A stretch of DNA of 63,795 bases, the filler included, from Choristocarpus tenellus KU-1152 (taxonomy: Eukaryota > Protista > Phaeophyceae): the NCBI GenBank assembly GCA_964200185.2. It is 11 parts of 11 records of this genome, joined end to end, with 100 filler letters (N's around TTAATTAATTAA, not from the genome) between each part and the next. Parts side by side here need not be neighbours in the genome. Positions count along the whole stretch, not along the records: positions 27,511 to 37,353 come from CAXNAD020003338.1; 10 more parts are not named here. One strand, given 5' to 3'. The notes beneath the pieces were generated by a model, which saw nothing but the letters and a program-made list of their open reading frames with translations, did no database searches and was not told the origin of the DNA. Shown in pieces: positions 28,313 through 37,353 of this stretch (positions within the stretch are counted from its first letter, which is position 1; each line of letters starts with the position of its first letter). The position numbers and the translations under genes were made by a program.

Positions 28313-31300
28313 CTATGGAGATGGTCCGGCCCGAGGTCCTTCGATGGCACTGGTATCAGAGGCAAAGTAGTACGTGGTATCTGTACCATAGCTTGTAGTG
28401 TCACCGAGAACGATACCTGACATGTCCACCTGTGCCGAGACAGCAAGTAGGAAAGTTGAGTGAGTAAACTTGTGATAGGGGAAGAACATGGAGAATGAAG
28501 GATGACAATATGTATATAGTTGTATCCCATTGATTTCGGGTTTTGCAAGTCATCACCGGATTGTGGTGTATTCAAGTGTAGAGTAATATCGAGGATGCAG
28601 CCTGTGCAAAATAGGACAGTAGTGATGTGTACCTTATTTTGTGTATGAGAGATGTAACTAATGAGATAGTACATCCCGATTATGAATGGGATTACTTATG
28701 GGTTTTTATTCTGCATTTAACTACTTTGATATAACCGTGGACTTACACATGAGGCACAAATAATAATAAAACAAGCAATGAGAAGGGGACAAAGGTCACT
28801 CTTCTAATTTGAAGTATCTAATCACGTTCAGCAATGGGGAACCGTATGAGGCTTCACACCTCCTTGTCTTCACTACTGAAAAATAGCATTACCTCCCAAG
28901 GTAAATTGCACACAGCCAAACCTTGAAACTTGCTGGGTTTGGCAGTAGTGCATGACACTTACAGATTTTCCTGTTGGGACAGTAAGGGGGATGTAGCCGG
29001 AGGTTCCACCGGCAGTGAGGCTCACACTTACGAGAGCTCCTGCAGAAGTTACAGTAAGCAAGGTGGTCGGAGGGTGACGAATGGTAGACGCATTTATTTG
29101 CTTAGTTCATACAACAAACTTGACTTTGAGGAAGATTGAGCACGTGTGACATGGGCATTAGCATTATGTCGGCTAGGAAGCGTGAGATCCAACTTCAGGT
29201 CAGCTGACTGGCCTAGCCAAGGGTGACAACAATATAGTCACTGCATTTTCGAAGAATCGATAAATTTGTGTGACAAGATGCTTGGTAGTAAGCATTGCAC
29301 CAGTATTCCTACTCATCTTTAGATAATACAGATGGTCATGAGAAGGGGAATACAAAGATTAGGCCCAGCGTTACACAACAAGAACATGTTGTAGATGGGG
29401 AAGAGATAACAAGGTGTAACATCTAATGAAAGTCCACACTAGATCTTTAATGCTTCACTGACAAGAAATGGTCAAGAGTCTAACCAACTGAGGTAGGTGG
29501 GTTGCGTTTTGACGAGAAAGAGCAAAAGTATGACATTTTGTACAATTGCAGAAGAGCCTTTGCTGATTTGTGGTACGACGTTGTGTACGGAAAGGGGGAA
29601 TATCAGCTTTGTCTACACTATTGTGCACAGAAAAAAAGCGAAATCGAGTTTATCGCATAAGGTAAGAAAGATGCCTTGGGAAAAAGTTAAAACCTGCCTA
29701 CCTCTTAATTGTTTTTACAACACTAATGTATAACACTCTGTGCCGTAAAAAAGAAACATGGCATGAGAGTTAACACATGCGGCGTGTATGGATGTGTTGA
29801 GCAGGCATCATGGGTGCAATGGACAGAAGGGAAGAGTGTCATGGGCCTGGGTATCTCACCAGTGGCATCCTTGGTGCCCCTGAGTAGAGGTGCAGCGTTG
29901 TCCAGCGCCTTGTGGAAATTGAAGTTTTGGCATAGATGATCAAACTTGAGAGTCTGAAGTGCCACAACAGAGGGGACGAAGGAGCAGTGAGGTAAGATGT
30001 GTAAGGAAGGAAATATTCAAAGGAGCTAATGCAAGGCATTGTGGGTTCCAGCTTTGAATTGTACTGGTTCGCAGTGTGTATGTTGCTGTGCTAAGAAAAT
30101 ATCATAATAAATGCGGACAAGACAGTCACAATCCCCATTTCTCAACAACTTGTAGTTGATGCCTTACAGGAGCAGCAATGTATTTGCTTTGCACCATATC
30201 ATCGAAGAGGCACCAGTACATAACTTAATGGGGAAGGTGATGAACGAAGTAATTTCCGCCATCATCTGCTCCATCCAGTATGCCAGGAGCGATGTGGTGG
30301 CACCATTTATGGTAGTGGGGAGCAGGTTGAGCTGTAGTGGTAGAGTAGAACAAACAGACAAGACAAGACCACATTTGAAGTACAGACGAAAAATATTGGA
30401 ATGTGTGCGAGAGCTCCTTCTGGATGAAAAGAAAGTGGCAAGGTATATATCAGCGATTTTCATGATTGAGCTAAAGACGAAAATCAAGACTGTACCATAG
30501 GTTTGCATCAGATATGGTCACATGGGGTTTGAGATGAGTGTGTATAAGGAGAAGTAATAATGGTCATAAAGAAATGTAGAATAGACTCGAAAGAGTGGTT
30601 TTCTAGTCCTCCATATAATATACTACATGCTACTACATATGCATATATACCCTATCAGTATCTATTAATAAGCGTTGTGTGTGCGTAACAAGCACAAGAC
30701 CAGTGGAAATGGTGGTGGTGTACAAGATAGATGAAACGCACTGTATTTTGATAAGTATCCCAAAATGCAATGAAATATAGGTGTTTTGGCAAGATGCTAC
30801 GGAGACAGTGTGGCCTATAGATACCAGAACGTTTGCTCCAATAGAAGACTTTGGCACACCTGGTGGAACATGTACTTGTCACGGAAGCCACCAAGTATCT
30901 GCCTCGTGGTGGCCTCCTTCTCCCAGCCAATTATGGCATCCAGTGATCCGAAGGACTGAATATCATCGCACAAACTGCAGGTCTATAGTGTGCAAAAGCG
31001 AGATATCTCAAAACGTTGTGGCGATGTGGTTTTGTGTGGAGGGAGTCCTCAATGATCAAGTTGACAGGAATTGTGTGCGTGTGGTGTGGAATGAGCAGAA
31101 ACGTATCTAGCTAAGGAGGACGAATATATATATATATGATTCAAAGCACTTTTTGTCAATACTCAATGACATTTTGCAGATGCCGTGGAGAAAAAGACAA
31201 CGAATACAAAATTATAAGAGCTCTTATTTGCTGACCCTGCCAAATAGTGAGTTTTCCAAGACCCAAAGTTAATTATGCTTGTCTAGTTAGAATAGCTACT

Positions 31301-34300
31301 GCACTGCTGCATATTCTTGTCCTTGTCATAGATTGGTAATGATACAGGTATTGTCGTGTAGGGAGGTCTTAGTTGCAAGCAAATATAGCAGCATTCCAGT
31401 TTGAGCTAGTTCTCATACGGATTCTGTTGTGTCCGTTGTGCTCTGCCTTTCTTCGCCACAGTGGCAAACAACTGCAAAATGGCTGTCATCCATGAGGACT
31501 TAACAATATCATAACCTCACTGTTGATTAGGAATTTAGTCCAAACCTCAACGTTAGAGTGCTCATACCACACTATAGTAGTTGGTACACTATATAATTAA
31601 TTAGAAAACACCAAGAGTCTAAACAATCAAACATACAGATTATGTGATCCTAACATCGTACTTGTATGCAACTCATGTAAAGATGAAAGAGTGTGCGAGC
31701 CATAAGCAATAACTTCAATGTTGTGGTGTTGACCTCCACCACCTTTCAAGTGTGTGAAATTGCACGGGACCGAAGTCAAAACTATTTGTATAATGTTATA
31801 CGTACTTCCACTCACTGTTGCGATTTCTTGTATGTGGTGTGGTACATTGAGATATTTGGAGAGTATGTACTACTTCTGTCATAATGTTCTTCCGCTGTGG
31901 TTTTTTCTTGTTTGGGTTTGGAAAATCGGAATATTTGGAGAGTATGTCAATTTCATTGAATAGATTAATAACACCCAAACAGTACCTGATCAGGACTGGG
32001 ACGTGTATGCAAAGGACAGGAGACGAACAGCATGAAGCGTCGAAAGGTGCAAGCATTTTTTTACCTCAACACTCAGTGCACAAGCATGTGACAAAAAAAA
32101 ATCAACCTTTCACTTTCGATGTGAGTCATGTTTCAGTCGAAATCTCGTAGACAAGCCAATAGTGCTATTGACAAGACCAACTGGTCTTTTCAGAAGGAGC
32201 TGCTGTTCTCTTCTATCTGATATTGGATGTTTTCAAAACACTCTACCAATACAGTTCGACTCAAAAACGTGAAAAATCAACCTGCAGCATACTAAATATT
32301 GCAAAATAATTTGGTTTGCAGGTAAGCAAAAACAGGGAGAGTAACTGGAGGACTTACCCCAGTATCAGCAAAAGGGTCCAGGTTGGTGCAACCGCAGACA
32401 ACTCGTCTGATCCACTCGTTCTCCTGGATGAGACACTGTGTATGGCATTTCCGACAGGTAAAGGTAAAATATAGTATGCAGCAGCCAAAGGAAAATGGTT
32501 TCTTGATCAACAAGGCTTCATGGCTCAGCCACATATTACGAAAAGAGGGATTTGCCCTGGGATTTTTTTTCCAAGTGTAAATACAAGAAAACGCTCTCCC
32601 TAGTGCAGAACAACGGGAGGTACCAACAATTAAAAAATTTACAGAGAGGGAAGATATCGACGGACAATCATCCCCCACCTCAGGCGTCCTGCAGTTGTAA
32701 TAGATGAAGGTTGCAAAGCGGGGAACAATAGTTGCTCCAGCATAACCTGTGTAAACGGGAACAAAATGTGGAGGTTTAATTGGGAAGGATAAGAGTGGGC
32801 AAAAGGAATCATCGCTGGCCTCAATGGGGATCGGAAATTAGTCTTCACTTCAAAGATGGACATATACTTCCCAAATTTGAACACACATCTGGGAGGTCAG
32901 CATTTACTTTGACACACTGCTGATAGACAAAGGCCTTGAAGAAATCATATCATATCACCTCCGTCGATAAACGTATCTTCTCGGGGAATCAGAGTCCCGT
33001 AAAATCAGAGAACAGCTAATCTCACTCTCACCGTTGGTGCTAACCGTGGTAGTCAGGGGATGGTACCGGTTTTCTGCAACAAGAGAGACACTCGTGATGC
33101 CAGGCAGGTAGGTGTTGTCTCCTGGATAGCATGTCATCATTTCTGCTGCTCCACTCCTTAAAAGACATAGCCAACAAGAAGAGGTAGAATAGTGGACATA
33201 CACAAAAGAAGTGAGGTGGGAATGGCAAAGTACATACATGGGAAGACAGACGATGATATTTGTCCAACCTCTTTAAATCTCACACCACATTTTCAATAAA
33301 AGTCGTGTCTTCGAAACAAACACCATTCACGAATGATCATTTTCAAATATCATCAAATTTCCTTGCTGAGAATTTCATAGTACAACACACGAAGAGTTCA
33401 AATATGAAATTCTAAAGATGAAAGGATACTACTTACTCAAGGCAGTACTTGTTGAAGAGGCCGCTAATCCCCGGCGAGGTCATGGAATACCAGTTGTAGT
33501 TTTCGTTCCCATAGTAGAATCCTGCCGCCTTGGTGAACTCAACGTTCCCTGAATGTACCCCAATCATGTAGGGCAATGGCGTATTAATTCAAAGGCATTT
33601 GGTTCTTGTTTTGTGCATCACTTAATATTGCATATTCGAAAGATACCATTTCGGATCAGAAACCATGTTCCACCAATCGTATGGATTGGAATTTCGTTTT
33701 GTTATTGGATTGAGTGAAGGGGAAATGCGGTGAACATACTGTAATTTACATATCGTGGACATTTATCACGAGATTACCGCATACTGTAATAGTACAAAAA
33801 CACAAAATAGTCCATATTTCCTCGCCTCCTTCTCCCCACGCCACGCAGAAAGTACATAATCTAAGCTTGTTCTTTCCTCACCCGTGTCCTCAATTTTACA
33901 ATCCGAGGATCCAAGATTGTCGCGAGTGAGGTGGGTCAACGTGTGCGATTGCCAGTGGAACTTTGTCTTGATATTTGTACTCAGCACAGCCGTGAAGAGG
34001 CCATCTGATTCCCAAACCCCAGCCTCAAACTCTTGTTGCATGCCAGGGACTGCAGTTGACAGCCACGATGTGTTGTGCTGCGGTGCCACTCCTAGGGTAG
34101 GTGTAGCAAGGAGTATGGAGCAACATTGGCAATGGAAACCACCCCATTGCATGAAAAGAGACGGGCATTGTTGTCTTGGTCAGATGCAGCACAGCTACTG
34201 TGGTGTGTGTGATGGCTGAACTCTCCCAGGACATAGGGCATACTCTAGAGCACGCACTACAATATCTGTACCTTGTGTAGTTGGATATGCTACATTACAG

Positions 34301-37300
34301 TTCGAGTTATGAAATGTGTAATGCACTATTTCCTCTACTGTTACGAACAGGGGCTATTGTACAATGAAATGCGATCTAGCTATCGTCCAAAATTGAGTCA
34401 ACTTCGAGCAATACTGTGACTCCAAAGCCTTCTGGAGTTGTTTTTAGTCCAATCCTGTCATCTGTTAACAGTGGTGCAATCTGTAGGGGTGAGGATGCGA
34501 AGAGATACTGGAGGAGGACCGCACATGCAAAATCCCTAGCAAAGCATTTCAAAGTATTTCCCTTACACCACTCACTGCAAACTGAACCTGAACCCTTACA
34601 GTATTGGAGGATGTAGAAAGGAGACCAGCACTGTTTGCTCTGGTACAGGTACCTTCCATGTCATTCTTACCAGTTCCTTGGACCTTTTCGCCCTTTGTGA
34701 GCTTTGCGATGTCAACATCATCAACAGACAGTGTAAATGCAGAGTTGACCTGTTTTCCAGCGTTCATCCAAGGATGAGAAGGGGTGAGGGCAGTATGAAA
34801 CGCCATAAATGCCTTCCACTTATTCAATCTAACAAGTTGGACTGGCAGGTCCTATGAATCCTTGGATGCGGTATATCAAGACAAATCCAAGTGAAAAAAT
34901 GACATAAAAAACGATGCAGCACAGTATTGCTTGAAAGACCCTCACACCTGAAGAAAACGGGTAAAATATAGGAATTAGTAACCACATGGTACGCAATACA
35001 TTACACTAATGAAATTATTGTGGCATATCGTAATGGTAGTAAGTGTATACTGGGAAATAATTTAATTCTGCAGTTGAATGTCATCTGAGAGAACACTGCT
35101 TAACATTAACCTTTACGGTGCTTGCAGCATTCCTCACGTACAAAATAATCACCTCTTGAAGAACGCCGTTACCATTGTAGGCAAACTCGGTGATCACATC
35201 GGCTCCATACATCGAGTTGAGAGAGTCCTGAAATGAAGCGAAGGTTGCAAAGTCTTCTCCGGTCATCCGTTCCTCTTCCTGATGAGGTCAGCAAGTACAC
35301 AGCGGCAAGATGCACCGCAATCGCGATGTGAGAGGAGAAAACACCATCGAGAGGAATGTCAATGTTATGTTTCGTGTGGGTTCCTGGATGGAGAAACACA
35401 CACTGTGAACACTATTTCTTGACATTCTCCTTACCAACTCAATAGACGAACGACTACTGCACCAATTAATAGGTCGACCATTCATTTGAAGACAACAGGT
35501 GCACAAGATCTATGATTGGAAGTAATAATAGCTACATACCTAAAATATTCTTCGTCATCTTTCCTTTTTTGAATTGGTGTCTACTATAATTGACCTTACA
35601 CTTCAATTGCACACCAAAAGTTCCAGTCCACAAATTGTGAGCGATATCGTTTCTCACCCCTGACATATTGTCACCACCATCGTACTCCCATGGAACTGTG
35701 CCGAGAAGAAGGTCATCCACCACAGGACCCAAGTAATACCGCCTCTCGCCCTAGAGTAGAAGTCGGTTAGGGTGGGGTTTGTGCCAAGGGACAAGATAGC
35801 TACGGTCAAAATCAAACAGAAATCTGATTCACTTTGTTGCTGATAATTGTTGCAAGAATGTCACGACCTAGATCATGGAAGCATACCCAATACTATGTTA
35901 TCTAAATGTGCCCGAAAAATTCCCCCAAACACCACACAATTCCTCGTACGTGCTCTGTTAGTCCAACTGCATGAGATCTAGTCTACTACTGTAACTAGAC
36001 TCAATGTATTCTACTTGGAGACAGCGTAGCACTTCAGCATACTATGACATGGAAATTATAGAGCTTTACCACTCCTACTATTGCATTGCCTCCGACTTTC
36101 ATCACCTCTCCCCACCGCCACCAACGCCCTATGACCGCTGATGTCAGTCGTCGTTTTAGCACCTGAAACACACCCTTGGTGGCCCACTCAGCGAAGAAGT
36201 TTGCCCAAGCCCATGAACCCATGTCAAACCACGCGATACTAAAGAACACATAGAGCTCTTCCAGGCCATCAATACCGATCCATTCTACCGCAGCAGCTGA
36301 CGGGTAGGCCTCTCCACTCTCGAGGAGATCGCCCGAGGCGGACGCGTACCTTGGTAAAAAACGTTGGAAAAATGCGAGGACGAGGGGAGGAGAGCAAAGA
36401 GTAGAGCTCTAATATGTCAATGTCTTTTGTTGTTCTTTTTGCAGGAAACAGAATATGGGCTTCACTTGTCGAGTGTCCTTGAATAGCTGCCCTTTAATCG
36501 TCTAATCAAGGAAATATGCAACACTTAGATGTTGTCTCCAAAATGAATGTAGCCCAATCTCTACACTTTACCTAAACACAACATTAACACCACACCACAC
36601 AGTGAATCAATTACTTCGAATTATACTAGTGGTACACAAAACCTCACCCAACTACCCCCAAGGACGATTCGCAATGCCAAACTCGAACATGCGACACACC
36701 CATATCGCAACTGTTACTCACGACGCTAAGATGACGGCTGTTCCATTGTTGAATGTGGACCCCCATTGGTGCAGGGGTCTGGCATACAGGTTATTGGTCT
36801 GTGGGTTGGTCTGCATGTTGTCCTTGCAAACGTTGCAGGCAGCATTGCCAGCCACTGCACAACGGCAACGACAGGGTGGGATTCAATGTCTTGAAGTTCT
36901 TTCATCTCGAGAGATCATTTTCTCATCAATAGTAGCCATGTTTGGAGGGACAAGTGACTATGTAGAGAGCCCCTGGTCGAATGACAAATCGATCATAATA
37001 TATCGAATACCCAAACAGCGAACTATTGCACACCTTAGCACAGTAGTAGTACCGCACAACGGTGAAGTCGAATTAAACCAAGACTTTTGTTCGCGTATGC
37101 ACCTACTTCCGGCTGCTGTTAACGACTTTCCACCTGCGACTACACCACACATCCATTGTTGTTGCGCTCCAGCAAGGAATACTGTAGAATAGGCATCGAC
37201 GTATCATTCTTGCAATTATTTTCGGCCACTGGTCTACCTTACCACTTACTAGTCAGCTTCAAACCCGCGGGGATAGGAGTGTCCGTCGAGAACAGTGGTT

Positions 37301-37353
37301 CGGCGAAGTACTGGGAGACCCTCAACCTCTCGTTTACTTCGACGTCGTTTGCA
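28313..37353 (-). CDS. Agd3-like (CAZy CE18) carbohydrate de-N-acetylase, 15 exons, 5' end truncated
   Basis: Exons (5' to 3'): 37353-37243, 36349-36163, 35750-35658, 35278-35153, 34749-34671, 34091-33882, 33548-33437, 33156-33032, 32746-32679, 32435-32358, 30982-30860, 30331-30224, 29953-29860, 29039-28963, 28429-28313 (TAG). All phases are consistent. Motifs occur in Agd3 order: EWATKGVFQGERRYYLGPVVDDLLL, EFAYNGNG, FHWQSHTLTHL, SPGISGLFN, PGDNT, VPRFATFIYYNC, DKYMFHQLNL, YIPLTVP, YGTD. One donor reads TT instead of GT. Confidence 0.88.
29476..29715. mobile_element. MITE family C (older copy) in an intron of the Agd3-like gene
   Basis: GAGTCTAACCAACTGAGGTAGG ... AAACCTGCCTACCTCTTAATTG; colinear with 24500 and 54225. 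Confidence 0.7.

What the first reader, a model, noticed from the sequence alone, without database searches (positions are those of the whole stretch)
28313..37353. Intron-rich Agd3/CE18-like polysaccharide deacetylase in a probable brown alga
Seen: 15 short exons, invisible as a gene in the ORF track, splice in phase into one protein with colinear motifs VVDD, HTLTH, PRFAT and YMFHQ, followed by a C-terminal beta-rich tail. Established (recalled from the Aspergillus fumigatus Agd3 sequence): Agd3 carries QIDD, HTFTH, PRWAT and YMFHQ. It is the metal-dependent alpha-1,4-GalNAc deacetylase that makes galactosaminogalactan cationic and adhesive, and CE18 is known mainly from fungi and bacteria. 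Inference: the Asp-Asp, His-x3-His, Arg and His residues are retained, so the enzyme is probably active. Fourteen introns, one containing a host MITE, argue against contamination and for long residence, possibly after horizontal transfer. Brown algal walls are described as alginate/fucan/cellulose, so the gene hints at either an undescribed amino-sugar polymer (adhesion or matrix) or an enzyme aimed at microbial biofilm polymers. I cannot tell whether algal homologues are already catalogued.
Basis: partly seen in the sequence, partly recalled or inferred. Interest (0 to 1): 0.85.

Follow-up and report, generated by a model that had tools for sequence, protein, structure and literature searches.

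The report
Brown-algal Agd3-like polysaccharide deacetylase gene
This is a real, intron-rich brown-alga gene for a secreted enzyme of the Agd3 type, which removes acetyl groups from amino-sugar polymers; the family is already in public databases for many brown algae but nobody has studied what it does there.

Summary
All Agd3 catalytic residues are present: Asp-Asp, His-x3-His, Arg, and Met/His in YMFHQ. The 5' end, about 100 to 120 residues, is cut off by the piece's edge.

The source is a brown alga. The closest protein is a partial Choristocarpus tenellus product, about 95% identical in the exons. Its locus is collinear with the window, and the same sequencing runs hold both loci, so the window gene is probably a paralogue.

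The family is not new as sequence. Dozens of paralogues exist across brown algae, often in tandem and often fused to WSC or GH114-associated domains. UniRef already names Ectocarpus members "Agd3 deacetylase domain-containing protein". I found no paper linking Agd3 or CE18 to brown algae.

A model of a Discosporangium homologue superposes on the Agd3 crystal structure over all three domains.

One junction is unsolved. Exon 13 to 14 has no canonical splice pair in the conserved frame, although the downstream exons are still under purifying selection.

The substrate is unknown. A galactosamine-type matrix polymer is plausible, because GH114 is amplified in brown algae. No RNA data were available.

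The parts
37250..37352 (-). Exon 1 as held in the piece, cut at its 5' side by the piece's edge. It encodes part of the N-terminal CBM87-like domain. The donor is GTAAGT after 37250; a weaker donor after 37265 is used in the public model of the paralogue.
   Evidence: 100% identical to P0079 residues 98-126. HMM positions 122-144. Junction candidates.
36722..36854 (-). Exon 2, N-terminal domain.
   Evidence: tblastn against P0001 and P0079. HMM 153-193, E 2e-8. Acceptor ...GTGCAG and donor GTGAGT.
36163..36349 (-). Exon 3, end of the N-terminal CBM87-like domain. It holds the Trp in 'AWFD' that aligns with Agd3 W344.
   Evidence: HMM 195-258, E 6e-28. Alignment of the family profile to 6nwz_A. 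W344 is described in PMC7229062.
35658..35750 (-). Exon 4, start of the deacetylase domain. It carries catalytic motif CM1 (VVDD, 35723-35712), equivalent to the Agd3 catalytic base D377 and metal ligand D378.
   Evidence: E 4e-13. Both Asp residues are invariant in the 31-sequence alignment A1 that includes fungi and Physarum.
35153..35278 (-). Exon 5, deacetylase domain.
   Evidence: Pfam PF25115 positions 23-62, 16.0 bits. HMM 290-330, E 2e-16.
34647..34749 (-). Exon 6, a poorly conserved loop region corresponding to the beta2 insertion of Agd3.
   Evidence: HMM 331-361, E 2e-5. tblastn against P0001. Junctions.
33882..34088 (-). Exon 7, carrying CM2 (HTLTH, 33945-33931), equivalent to the Agd3 metal ligands H510 and H514.
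   Evidence: 73 hits in 1.84 billion proteins with this exon; E 6e-27.
33437..33548 (-). Exon 8, deacetylase domain.
   Evidence: HMM 426-460, E 1e-15. Donor GTAAGT.
33032..33156 (-). Exon 9, deacetylase domain.
   Evidence: HMM 462-504, E 9e-16. Junctions.
32679..32746 (-). Exon 10, carrying CM3 (PRFAT, 32723-32709), equivalent to Agd3 R613. The following Tyr-Tyr matches Y619/Y620.
   Evidence: Pfam PF25115 positions 234-255, 24.6 bits, E 1.5e-5 for 22 residues..
32358..32435 (-). Exon 11, a Cys-rich insertion of about 23 residues that brown-algal members have and Agd3 lacks.
   Evidence: It appears as a gap in 6nwz_A opposite the profile columns for this stretch. HMM 528-552, E 2e-13. No Pfam hit.
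30860..30982 (-). Exon 12, carrying CM4 (YMFHQ, 30874-30860), equivalent to Agd3 M666 and the catalytic acid H668.
   Evidence: The top PDB hit of this exon alone is 6nwz_A. Pfam positions 268-298. HMM E 1e-19.
30224..30331 (-). Exon 13, the last helix region of the deacetylase domain. It is followed by TTATGT instead of a GT or GC donor.
   Evidence: Pfam 308-340. Relatives have AAG|GT or AAG|GC at this conserved phase-0 intron position.
29860..29953 (-). Exon 14, linker into the C-terminal domain.
   Evidence: HMM 633-662, directly contiguous with exon 13, E 4e-10. tblastn E 2e-11 against P0001.
28963..29039 (-). Exon 15, C-terminal beta domain.
   Evidence: HMM 666-688. It aligns to the C-terminal domain of Agd3 through the family profile.
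28313..28429 (-). Exon 16, C-terminal beta domain, plus the stop codon TAG at 28315-28313.
   Evidence: HMM 692-728, E 2e-9. The paralogous locus has its stop at the same position.
28598..28912 (.). High-copy interspersed element inserted in intron 15.
   Evidence: Word depth 55,000-61,000 against about 25 in the flanks, in two runs. It is absent from the paralogous locus L001. No terminal inverted repeat of 11 or more of 14 bases was found.
29513..29712 (.). Moderately repeated stretch in intron 14.
   Evidence: Word depth about 1,070 against about 25. Intron 14 is 820 nt here and 577 nt in L001.

Best explanation
The piece holds most of a nuclear gene of a brown alga, Choristocarpus tenellus or a very close relative. 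The gene has at least 16 exons. It encodes a secreted three-domain enzyme of the Agd3/CE18 type: a CBM87-like N-terminal domain, a metal-dependent (beta/alpha)-barrel de-N-acetylase domain, and a C-terminal beta domain. By analogy with Agd3, the second Asp of VVDD and the two His of HTLTH hold a divalent metal that activates water. The first Asp is the catalytic base, held in place by the Arg of PRFAT. The His of YMFHQ protonates the leaving amine. The result is that an N-acetylhexosamine polymer outside the cell becomes partly cationic. Shown here: homology, gene structure, retention of all catalytic residues, the three-domain fold in a 54%-identical homologue, purifying selection, and residence in the algal genome. 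Inferred: secretion (signal peptides are seen in full-length relatives, but the 5' end is off the piece), activity, and the substrate. My best guess for the substrate is an alpha-1,4-GalNAc-rich, galactosaminogalactan- or Pel-like polymer of the alga's own matrix or adhesive. Rough odds: real Agd3-family gene of a brown alga 0.95; encodes an active deacetylase 0.65; substrate is a GalNAc-type polymer of the alga itself 0.3.
For: Gene and family. The exons tile a brown-algal HMM and five exons hit Pfam PF25115 colinearly. Full-length relatives score 127-169 bits on PF25115. The family profile hits only Agd3 in the PDB, at E 2e-135 over chain residues 31-682. A single brown-algal protein gives E 9e-33. 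Catalytic residues. D-D, H-x3-H, R, and M/H align to D377/D378, H510/H514, R613, and M666/H668, which were shown to be essential in PMC7229062. Fold. The AlphaFold model of P0077 has pLDDT 90.2. Its top Foldseek hit is 6nwz_A at E 3.6e-38 with TM 0.72/0.80 over 744 columns. Host. The closest protein is C. tenellus P0079. Its locus is collinear with the window. Both loci are in the same runs at similar depth. Intron positions are shared with Pylaiella, Ectocarpus and Discosporangium. Selection against the paralogue: dN/dS is 0.10 for exons 1-13 (P 2e-19) and 0.34 for exons 14-16 (P 0.011). Substrate lead. GH114, the family of the alpha-1,4-galactosaminidase Ega3, has about 5 genes per brown-algal genome and is 'markedly amplified'. 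Some brown-algal members are fused to Pfam's GH114-associated domain, and many to the carbohydrate-binding WSC domain.
Against: No RNA run holds the gene, so no splice junction is confirmed. The exon 13/14 junction has no GT-AG or GC-AG pair in the conserved frame. Use of the only nearby canonical-looking donor (AA|GTTATG) would shift the frame and remove the C-terminal domain. The N-terminus is missing from the piece. Pfam's CBM87 and Agd3_C models do not hit the brown-algal proteins, so those two domains rest on profile and fold comparison of relatives. No partner of the fungal GAG cluster lies within 10 kb of the relatives examined; only further paralogues do. In the papers I searched and read, none of the passages examined links galactosamine to a brown-algal wall polymer. 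The second-best fold match is the heparan-sulfate N-deacetylase part of human NDST1, so other N-acetylated substrates are possible.
Confidence: 0.6

Rival explanations
1. The gene is a decaying or truncated copy. One G was lost at the exon 13 donor (AAG|GT became AAG|TT). Normal splicing at AA|GT would shift the frame, so the product would lack the C-terminal domain or be degraded.
For: The window has AAG|TTATGT and the paralogue L001 has AAG|TTGTGT. All other relatives examined have AAG|GT or AAG|GC at this conserved intron position. The public gene model of the paralogue stops exactly there. dN/dS rises from 0.10 to 0.34 downstream.
Against: The lesion is shared by two loci that have since diverged by dS about 0.18. 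Exons 1-13 nonetheless show strong purifying selection. Exons 14-16 keep an open homology frame and the same stop position. They differ at 7.8% of bases against about 17% in the flanking introns (Fisher p 5e-5), with dN/dS 0.34 (P 0.011). That pattern fits continued translation of the C-terminal domain.
Confidence: 0.15
2. It is an active Agd3-fold enzyme working on a different N-acetylated glycan, not a GalNAc polymer. Candidates are a GlcNAc-containing or heparosan-like chain, or a glycoprotein glycan. It might act before N-sulfation, as in animal NDST.
For: The model's second-best structural matches are human NDST1, at TM 0.45 and E 6e-12. Bacterial relatives also hit Pfam HSNSD-CE. The brown-algal clade is only 23-30% identical to Agd3 and has its own Cys-rich insertion near the active site.
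Against: The best match by far is Agd3 itself over all three domains, including the substrate-cleft Trp of CBM87. GH114 amplification and GH114-associated fusions point to galactosamine chemistry.
Confidence: 0.2
3. The enzyme is aimed at polymers of microbes living on the alga, such as fungal galactosaminogalactan or bacterial Pel/PNAG-like biofilms. It would serve as a defence or surface-conditioning factor, not a wall-building enzyme.
For: Family members are secreted and sit in expanded tandem arrays, as is common for defence-related genes. The known substrates of this enzyme class are biofilm polymers.
Against: Deacetylation makes such polymers more adhesive, not less, in the one characterised case. 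The fusions are to WSC, a domain that the brown-algal genome survey describes as a wall stress-responsive component and mechanosensor domain. The family is conserved from the base of the brown algae.
Confidence: 0.08
4. The sequence is a fungal or bacterial contaminant in the assembly.
For: CE18 was described from fungi and bacteria.
Against: The nearest relatives are brown-algal genes at 45-95% identity, against 23-30% for fungi. There are fifteen introns at positions shared with other brown algae. GC content is 42-45%, like the C. tenellus contig. Depth is even at about 25 with host high-copy repeats inside introns.
Confidence: 0.01

Closest known systems
Aspergillus fumigatus Agd3 (PDB 6NWZ), founding member of CAZy CE18 with CBM87
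   Same: The three-domain order is the same: an alpha/beta N-terminal carbohydrate-binding domain, a metal-dependent deacetylase barrel, and a C-terminal beta domain. All four catalytic motifs and their essential residues are shared, as are the long insertion between CM1 and CM2 and the cleft Trp. The only PDB sequence hit is Agd3, and it is the top fold hit at TM 0.72/0.80 for a homologue.
   Different: Identity is only about 23-30%. Pfam's CBM87 and Agd3_C models do not reach the algal proteins. There is a brown-alga-specific Cys-rich insertion of about 23 residues after CM3 (exon 11). No GAG-type gene cluster surrounds the relatives. Many paralogues occur per genome, often fused to WSC, GH114-associated or Pro-rich extensin-like regions. 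The substrate is unknown.
Brown-algal 'Agd3 deacetylase domain-containing' / 'WSC domain-containing' / 'conserved unknown' proteins (Ectocarpus siliculosus, Pylaiella, Scytosiphon, Undaria, Discosporangium, Choristocarpus; e.g. CAM9244706.1)
   Same: This is the family the window gene belongs to. The family forms one clade with 100% support, and the window's closest relative, P0079, nests in it. Intron positions are shared, and identity runs from 45% to about 95%.
   Different: The window copy is not identical to any protein returned by my searches. It is closest to the partial C. tenellus product P0079. The model of P0079 skips the His-x3-His part of exon 7 and stops at exon 13. The window copy has no WSC domain in the part held and no Pro-rich tail; its stop comes right after the beta domain.
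CE4 polysaccharide deacetylases (PgaB, IcaB, PelA deacetylase domain, chitin deacetylases)
   Same: The Asp-Asp and His-x3-His metal and base motifs and the general acid/base mechanism are shared. These proteins appear as weak fold matches. The relationship is described in PMC7229062.
   Different: The spacing between the first two motifs is more than double. The activating Arg comes late in the sequence. There is no MT4 Asp. There are also extra N- and C-terminal domains.
Animal heparan sulfate N-deacetylase/N-sulfotransferase NDST1, deacetylase part
   Same: It is the second-best structural match of the homologue's model, at TM about 0.45 and E 6e-12.
   Different: There is no sulfotransferase domain here. 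Sequence identity is about 11%, and the match is much poorer than to Agd3.

Membership tests
CAZy CE18 / Pfam PF25115 Agd3_CE | Significant sequence match to the Agd3 deacetylase-domain profile | tested here: met
   Tested exon by exon. Five exons hit only PF25115, colinearly, at 16.0, 13.5, 24.6, 14.8 and 16.7 bits, summing to 85.6 against a cut-off of 27.6. No single exon reaches the cut-off. Relatives that are 45-95% identical score 127-169 bits. The spliced product was not scanned as one protein.
CAZy CE18 / Agd3 | CM1: adjacent Asp-Asp (catalytic base D377, metal ligand D378) | tested here: met
   VVDD at 35723-35712 aligns with QIDD of 6nwz_A through the family profile. Both Asp are invariant in the 31-sequence alignment A1.
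CAZy CE18 / Agd3 | CM2: His-x3-His metal ligands (H510, H514), more than 120 residues after CM1 | tested here: met
   HTLTH at 33945-33931 aligns with HTFTH. CM1 and CM2 lie about 135 residues apart by the exon lengths, as in Agd3.
CAZy CE18 / Agd3 | CM3: late Arg (R613) that positions the catalytic base | tested here: met
   PRFAT at 32723-32709 aligns with PRWAT. The Arg is invariant in alignment A1.
CAZy CE18 / Agd3 | CM4: Met and catalytic-acid His (M666, H668) in YMFHQ | tested here: met
   YMFHQ at 30874-30860 is identical to Agd3. M, H and Q are invariant in alignment A1.
CAZy CE18 / Agd3 | Three-domain architecture: CBM87, then CE, then C-terminal beta domain | tested here: inconclusive
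   For relatives it is met. The family profile aligns to Agd3 chain residues 31-682, and the model of P0077 superposes at TM 0.72/0.80. In the window, the CE and C-terminal parts and the second half of the N-terminal domain are present (HMM 122-728). The first half lies beyond the piece's edge. Pfam PF25116 and PF25117 do not hit the algal proteins.
CAZy CE18 / Agd3 | Metal-dependent de-N-acetylation of alpha-1,4-GalNAc oligomers or polymers | not testable with these tools
   This is a biochemical property, shown only for Agd3.
Fungal galactosaminogalactan (GAG) system | Co-location with uge3, sph3 (GH135), ega3 (GH114) and gtb3 in one gene cluster | tested here: not met
   The window holds no second gene. 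Neighbourhoods of plus or minus 10 kb around relatives in Pylaiella, Ectocarpus and Scytosiphon hold only further Agd3_CE paralogues or an unannotated small gene. Genome-wide presence of the partners could not be searched. GH114 is reported as amplified in brown algae.

The most novel reading that the evidence does not exclude
Brown algae have, since before their first split, made and remodelled a partly de-N-acetylated, cationic galactosamine-type polymer in their extracellular matrix or adhesives. This polymer would resemble fungal galactosaminogalactan or bacterial Pel. The machinery would be this multigene CE18-like family together with the amplified GH114 family. Such a wall component is missing from the accepted alginate, fucan and cellulose picture.
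Probability: 0.3. Interest if true: 0.75.

Novelty: new member of a known kind. Interest (0 to 1): 0.5.

Why it matters
Agd3-type deacetylation is what turns a neutral amino-sugar polymer into a sticky, cationic one in fungal and bacterial biofilms. This study finds that brown algae keep many copies of the whole three-domain enzyme with an intact active site, under purifying selection and fused to wall-associated domains. They also have an expanded family of galactosaminidase-like GH114 genes. Together these point to a matrix or adhesive polymer that brown-algal wall models do not include. That idea is directly testable by enzyme assay and by sugar analysis. For annotation, the result gives a name and a catalytic-residue map to proteins now filed as 'unnamed' or 'conserved unknown'. 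It also flags errors in a public gene model. The gene itself is ordinary in the sense that its family is already in the databases.

Tried and rejected
The following led nowhere or was set aside.

- PDB searches with single exons gave little. Exon 7 found nothing. Exon 5 gave only chance-level serpin hits.
- The look-up of encoding contigs found no record of the window's own 128-residue ORF.
- No RNA run was found. The third run, X3 (a different organism in the same study), laid no reads.
- The search for terminal inverted repeats of the intron-15 element was negative, so 'MITE' stays unproven.
- A search of the Mazeas 2024 supplements for CE18, GH114, GH135 and CBM87 found no occurrences. The count tables are not held in searchable form, so this says little.
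- The Atlas search with the GH114-associated region of P0121 gave only sub-threshold hits.
- Rfam and tRNA scans of the piece were empty.

Alternatives I considered for the exon 13/14 junction and set aside:
- A read-through to a GC donor after 30188, adding 12 residues. The GC is not at the homologous place in the paralogue.
- A 19-nt micro-exon at 30186-30168. It would restore the frame but needs a 38-nt intron.
- The strong conserved donor GTAAGG at 30167. It has the wrong phase for every nearby acceptor.
- A downstream acceptor inside exon 14. It would delete 25 conserved residues.

Horizontal transfer could not be judged. My outgroup sample is nine ascomycetes, one Physarum protein and two long-branched unknowns, and it gives no root.

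All searches with window sequence were exon by exon, by reference. Scripts joined only the few bases needed to read a split codon. The fold and the tree used natural homologues.

Full report
**Observation**

The piece is 9,843 bases with 41-49% G+C and has no long ORF. Stop-free stretches around the HTLTH motif, the YMFHQ motif and exon 5 each gave a weak Pfam hit to one family only, PF25115 (Agd3 deacetylase domain), at colinear profile positions; those around VVDD and PRFAT gave none at that stage. The YMFHQ exon alone has the Agd3 crystal structure 6nwz_A as its top PDB hit.

**Finding relatives**

I searched 1.84 billion representative proteins with the 137-residue stop-free stretch that holds HTLTH. 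This gave 73 hits, 29 of them at E 1e-10 or better. The full-length hits are brown-algal proteins filed as 'unnamed protein product', from Choristocarpus tenellus, Pylaiella littoralis, Scytosiphon promiscuus, Hapterophycus canaliculatus and Ectocarpus. Six of the seven hits of 500 residues or more that I scanned score 138-169 bits on PF25115, and the seventh (P0034) 93.5; a 407-residue Ectocarpus product is below the cut-off.

A second search with one of them showed a family of about 50 clusters, nearly all from brown algae. The family includes Discosporangium, Sphacelaria and three tandem genes in Undaria. Many members carry an N-terminal WSC domain. Ectocarpus siliculosus members are 'conserved unknown protein' in NCBI. 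UniRef already names them 'Agd3 deacetylase domain-containing protein' or 'WSC domain-containing protein'. The only non-algal hits were two ascomycete Agd3 proteins and one Physarum protein, at 23-30% identity.

**Gene model**

tblastn of these proteins against the piece gave 16 colinear blocks on the minus strand. I fixed the borders by requiring GT-AG, phase continuity and agreement with the homologues. The exons, given as first to last base, are:

| Exon | Coordinates |
|---|---|
| E1 | 37352 (piece edge)-37250 |
| E2 | 36854-36722 |
| E3 | 36349-36163 |
| E4 | 35750-35658 |
| E5 | 35278-35153 |
| E6 | 34749-34647 |
| E7 | 34088-33882 |
| E8 | 33548-33437 |
| E9 | 33156-33032 |
| E10 | 32746-32679 |
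| E11 | 32435-32358 |
| E12 | 30982-30860 |
| E13 | 30331-30224 |
| E14 | 29953-29860 |
| E15 | 29039-28963 |
| E16 | 28429-28316 |

The stop codon TAG is at 28315-28313. The exons sum to 1851 nt, or 617 codons.

An HMM built from 44 brown-algal rows (no fungal rows, no closest paralogue) hits every exon separately. The hits fall at profile positions 122-144, 153-193, 195-258, 259-287, 290-330, 331-361, 360-424, 426-460, 462-504, 506-526, 528-552, 554-595, 597-632, 633-662, 666-688 and 692-728. No exon is missing between profile positions 122 and 728. About 120 N-terminal positions lie beyond the piece's edge.

As a control, I searched all 351 stop-free segments from the six frames. Only the 15 minus-strand segments that carry these exons hit. 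Against Pfam, exons 5, 7, 10, 12 and 13 hit only PF25115, colinearly, for 85.6 bits in sum. The 22-residue exon 10 alone reaches E 1.5e-5.

**Whose genome**

The best match is P0079, a partial 580-residue product of C. tenellus. It is 87-100% identical in each exon. Its contig, L001 (GCA_964200185.2), is collinear with the window along the whole gene. Exons are 89-100% identical in DNA and introns 78-94%.

Two public runs of one organism hold the window sequence exactly, at word depth about 25 and about 7. The same runs hold variant contigs that agree with L001 at 27 of 30 comparable variable places (a 31st falls in an alignment gap). Both loci therefore sit in one genome. The window gene is most simply a paralogue, with dS about 0.18, of the gene behind P0079, in Choristocarpus or a very close relative.

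C. tenellus has at least three further paralogues: P0001, P0002 and P0124. Contamination is excluded by four observations:
- Identity to fungal proteins is low.
- Intron positions are shared with other brown algae.
- Depth is even across the gene.
- The introns contain host repeats.

On that last point, intron 15 holds a 315-nt insertion (28598-28912). It is absent from L001, and its word depth is about 60,000. I found no terminal inverted repeats, so I call it a high-copy short element, not a proven MITE.

**Family membership**

The paper that founded CE18 defines four catalytic motifs (PMC7229062):
- D377 is the catalytic base.
- D378, H510 and H514 bind the metal.
- R613 positions the base.
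- M666 and H668 form CM4, with H668 as the catalytic acid.

It also defines a three-domain architecture with CBM87.

A profile of the algal family hits only Agd3 in the PDB, at E 2e-135, over chain residues 31-682 of 684. That span covers all three domains. One algal protein on its own gives E 9e-33.

In that alignment the window's VVDD, HTLTH, PRFAT and YMFHQ stand opposite QIDD, HTFTH, PRWAT and YMFHQ. The Trp of 'AWFD' in exon 3 stands opposite the cleft residue W344. D-D, R, M, H and Q are invariant across algae, fungi and Physarum.

I folded a natural homologue, P0077 of Discosporangium. It is 54% identical to the window's exons and has a signal peptide. I did not fold a spliced model. 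The result has pLDDT 90.2 and pTM 0.90. Its top Foldseek hit is 6nwz_A, at E 3.6e-38 with TM 0.72/0.80 over 744 columns. Next come human NDST1 (TM about 0.45) and PelA.

Differences from Agd3:
- Pfam's CBM87 and C-terminal models do not reach the algal proteins.
- Exon 11 encodes a Cys-rich insertion that Agd3 lacks.
- There is no GAG-type cluster around the relatives, only tandem paralogues.

**The unsolved junction**

The intron after exon 13 is at a conserved phase-0 position. Pylaiella, Ectocarpus, Discosporangium and the C. tenellus paralogue P0002 have AAG|GT there. P0001 has AAG|GC. The window has AAG|TTATGT and L001 has AAG|TTGTGT, as if one G had been lost.

The join that the homology requires is …FPIK|TLKF…, where HMM positions 632 and 633 meet. 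It can only be written as TT-AG, GT-CA or AG-TC. Splicing at AA|GT would shift the frame. The public model of P0079 stops exactly here. It also skips the His-x3-His half of exon 7.

The two loci share this state and have since diverged. Over that time exons 1-13 show dN/dS 0.10 (P 2e-19). Exons 14-16 show dN/dS 0.34 (P 0.011). Exons 14-16 also keep an open frame, the same stop position, and 7.8% divergence against about 17% in the flanking introns (Fisher p 5e-5).

I take this to mean that the C-terminal domain is still translated, through a splice that I cannot specify. A truncated or decaying copy remains possible; I put it at about 0.15. Only RNA can decide, and no RNA run was on offer.

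**Function**

The steps up to 'Agd3-type, metal-dependent de-N-acetylase fold with a complete active site, secreted in full-length relatives' are shown. Activity and substrate are inferred.

Three things point to galactosamine chemistry:
- Agd3 is by far the best match over all three domains.
- GH114 has about five genes per brown-algal genome. Its reported activity is alpha-1,4-galactosaminidase, and it is the family of Ega3. It is described as markedly amplified at the origin of the group (PMC11468063 and the Phaeoexplorer preprint).
- Several algal members fuse the Agd3 domain to Pfam's 'GH114-associated' domain, at 38-77 bits against a cut-off of 22.

The WSC and Pro-rich fusions fit a wall location.

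Against this, I found no paper that links Agd3 or CE18 to brown algae, and none of the passages I examined links galactosamine to a brown-algal wall polymer. The NDST1 similarity also leaves other N-acetylated substrates open.

**Evolution**

In a 45-row tree, the 33 brown-algal-type sequences form one clade (SH-aLRT 100) and the nine ascomycete sequences another (99). Long branches separate them. The five Discosporangiales sequences form a clade (100), with the Choristocarpus paralogues together (96).

The family was therefore present in the ancestor of the sampled brown algae and has duplicated repeatedly since. With no root and few outgroups, nothing can be said about horizontal transfer or its direction.

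Some members of the clade lie on short contigs as uninterrupted ORFs. These are either transcripts or come from intron-poor relatives.

**Verdict**

The host is a brown alga. The family is already catalogued by automatic annotation but is unstudied, so this gene is a new member of a known kind.

The wider idea, an overlooked amino-sugar polymer in brown-algal matrices, is worth testing. The odd splice junction is a small unexplained point.

Noticed in passing
L001:5487-13167 (C. tenellus contig CAXNAD020000547.1), compared with window 34088-33882 and 30331-30224: The public gene model behind P0079 uses a donor inside exon 7, so it omits the His-x3-His metal motif. It ends, marked partial, exactly at the odd exon 13 donor. 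The DNA of that locus does encode the motif and the three downstream exons.
   Followed up: partly
window 37352-36533 versus the rest of the gene: Against the paralogous locus, exons 1-2 and introns 1-2 are 90-100% identical, while the other introns are 78-85%. This looks like a gene-conversion tract at the 5' end of the two copies.
   Followed up: partly
window 32357-30983 (intron 11): This intron is 1,375 nt here and 579 nt in the paralogue. It holds a direct repeat of 33 nt spaced 79 nt apart (31836-31868 and 31915-31947). The origin of the extra 800 nt was not examined.
   Followed up: no
P0121 (Scytosiphon, locus L007), P0120, P0122, P0082: Some brown-algal Agd3-domain proteins carry one or two copies of Pfam PF14741, 'N-terminal glycosyl-hydrolase-114-associated domain', either before or after the deacetylase part. 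This is a domain-fusion hint that ties the family to GH114-type substrates.
   Followed up: partly
model of P0077:1-745: After Agd3, the best structural matches are the human heparan-sulfate N-deacetylase/N-sulfotransferase NDST1 structures (TM about 0.45), then PelA.
   Followed up: no
L004, L005, L007 (Ectocarpus, Pylaiella, Scytosiphon): Agd3-domain genes lie in tandem arrays of two or three, each 10-16 kb long, in both orientations.
   Followed up: partly
L006 (ENA assembly ERZ27317601, contig k141_403041): An 834-residue member of the brown-algal-type clade is encoded as one uninterrupted ORF on a 3,043-nt contig. It is either a transcript in a metatranscriptome or comes from an intron-poor relative of unknown identity.
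   Followed up: no
window 36602-37192, plus strand: A 196-residue ORF runs antisense over exon 2 and intron 1. It does not hit the family HMM and was not examined further. It is probably a chance ORF.
   Followed up: no
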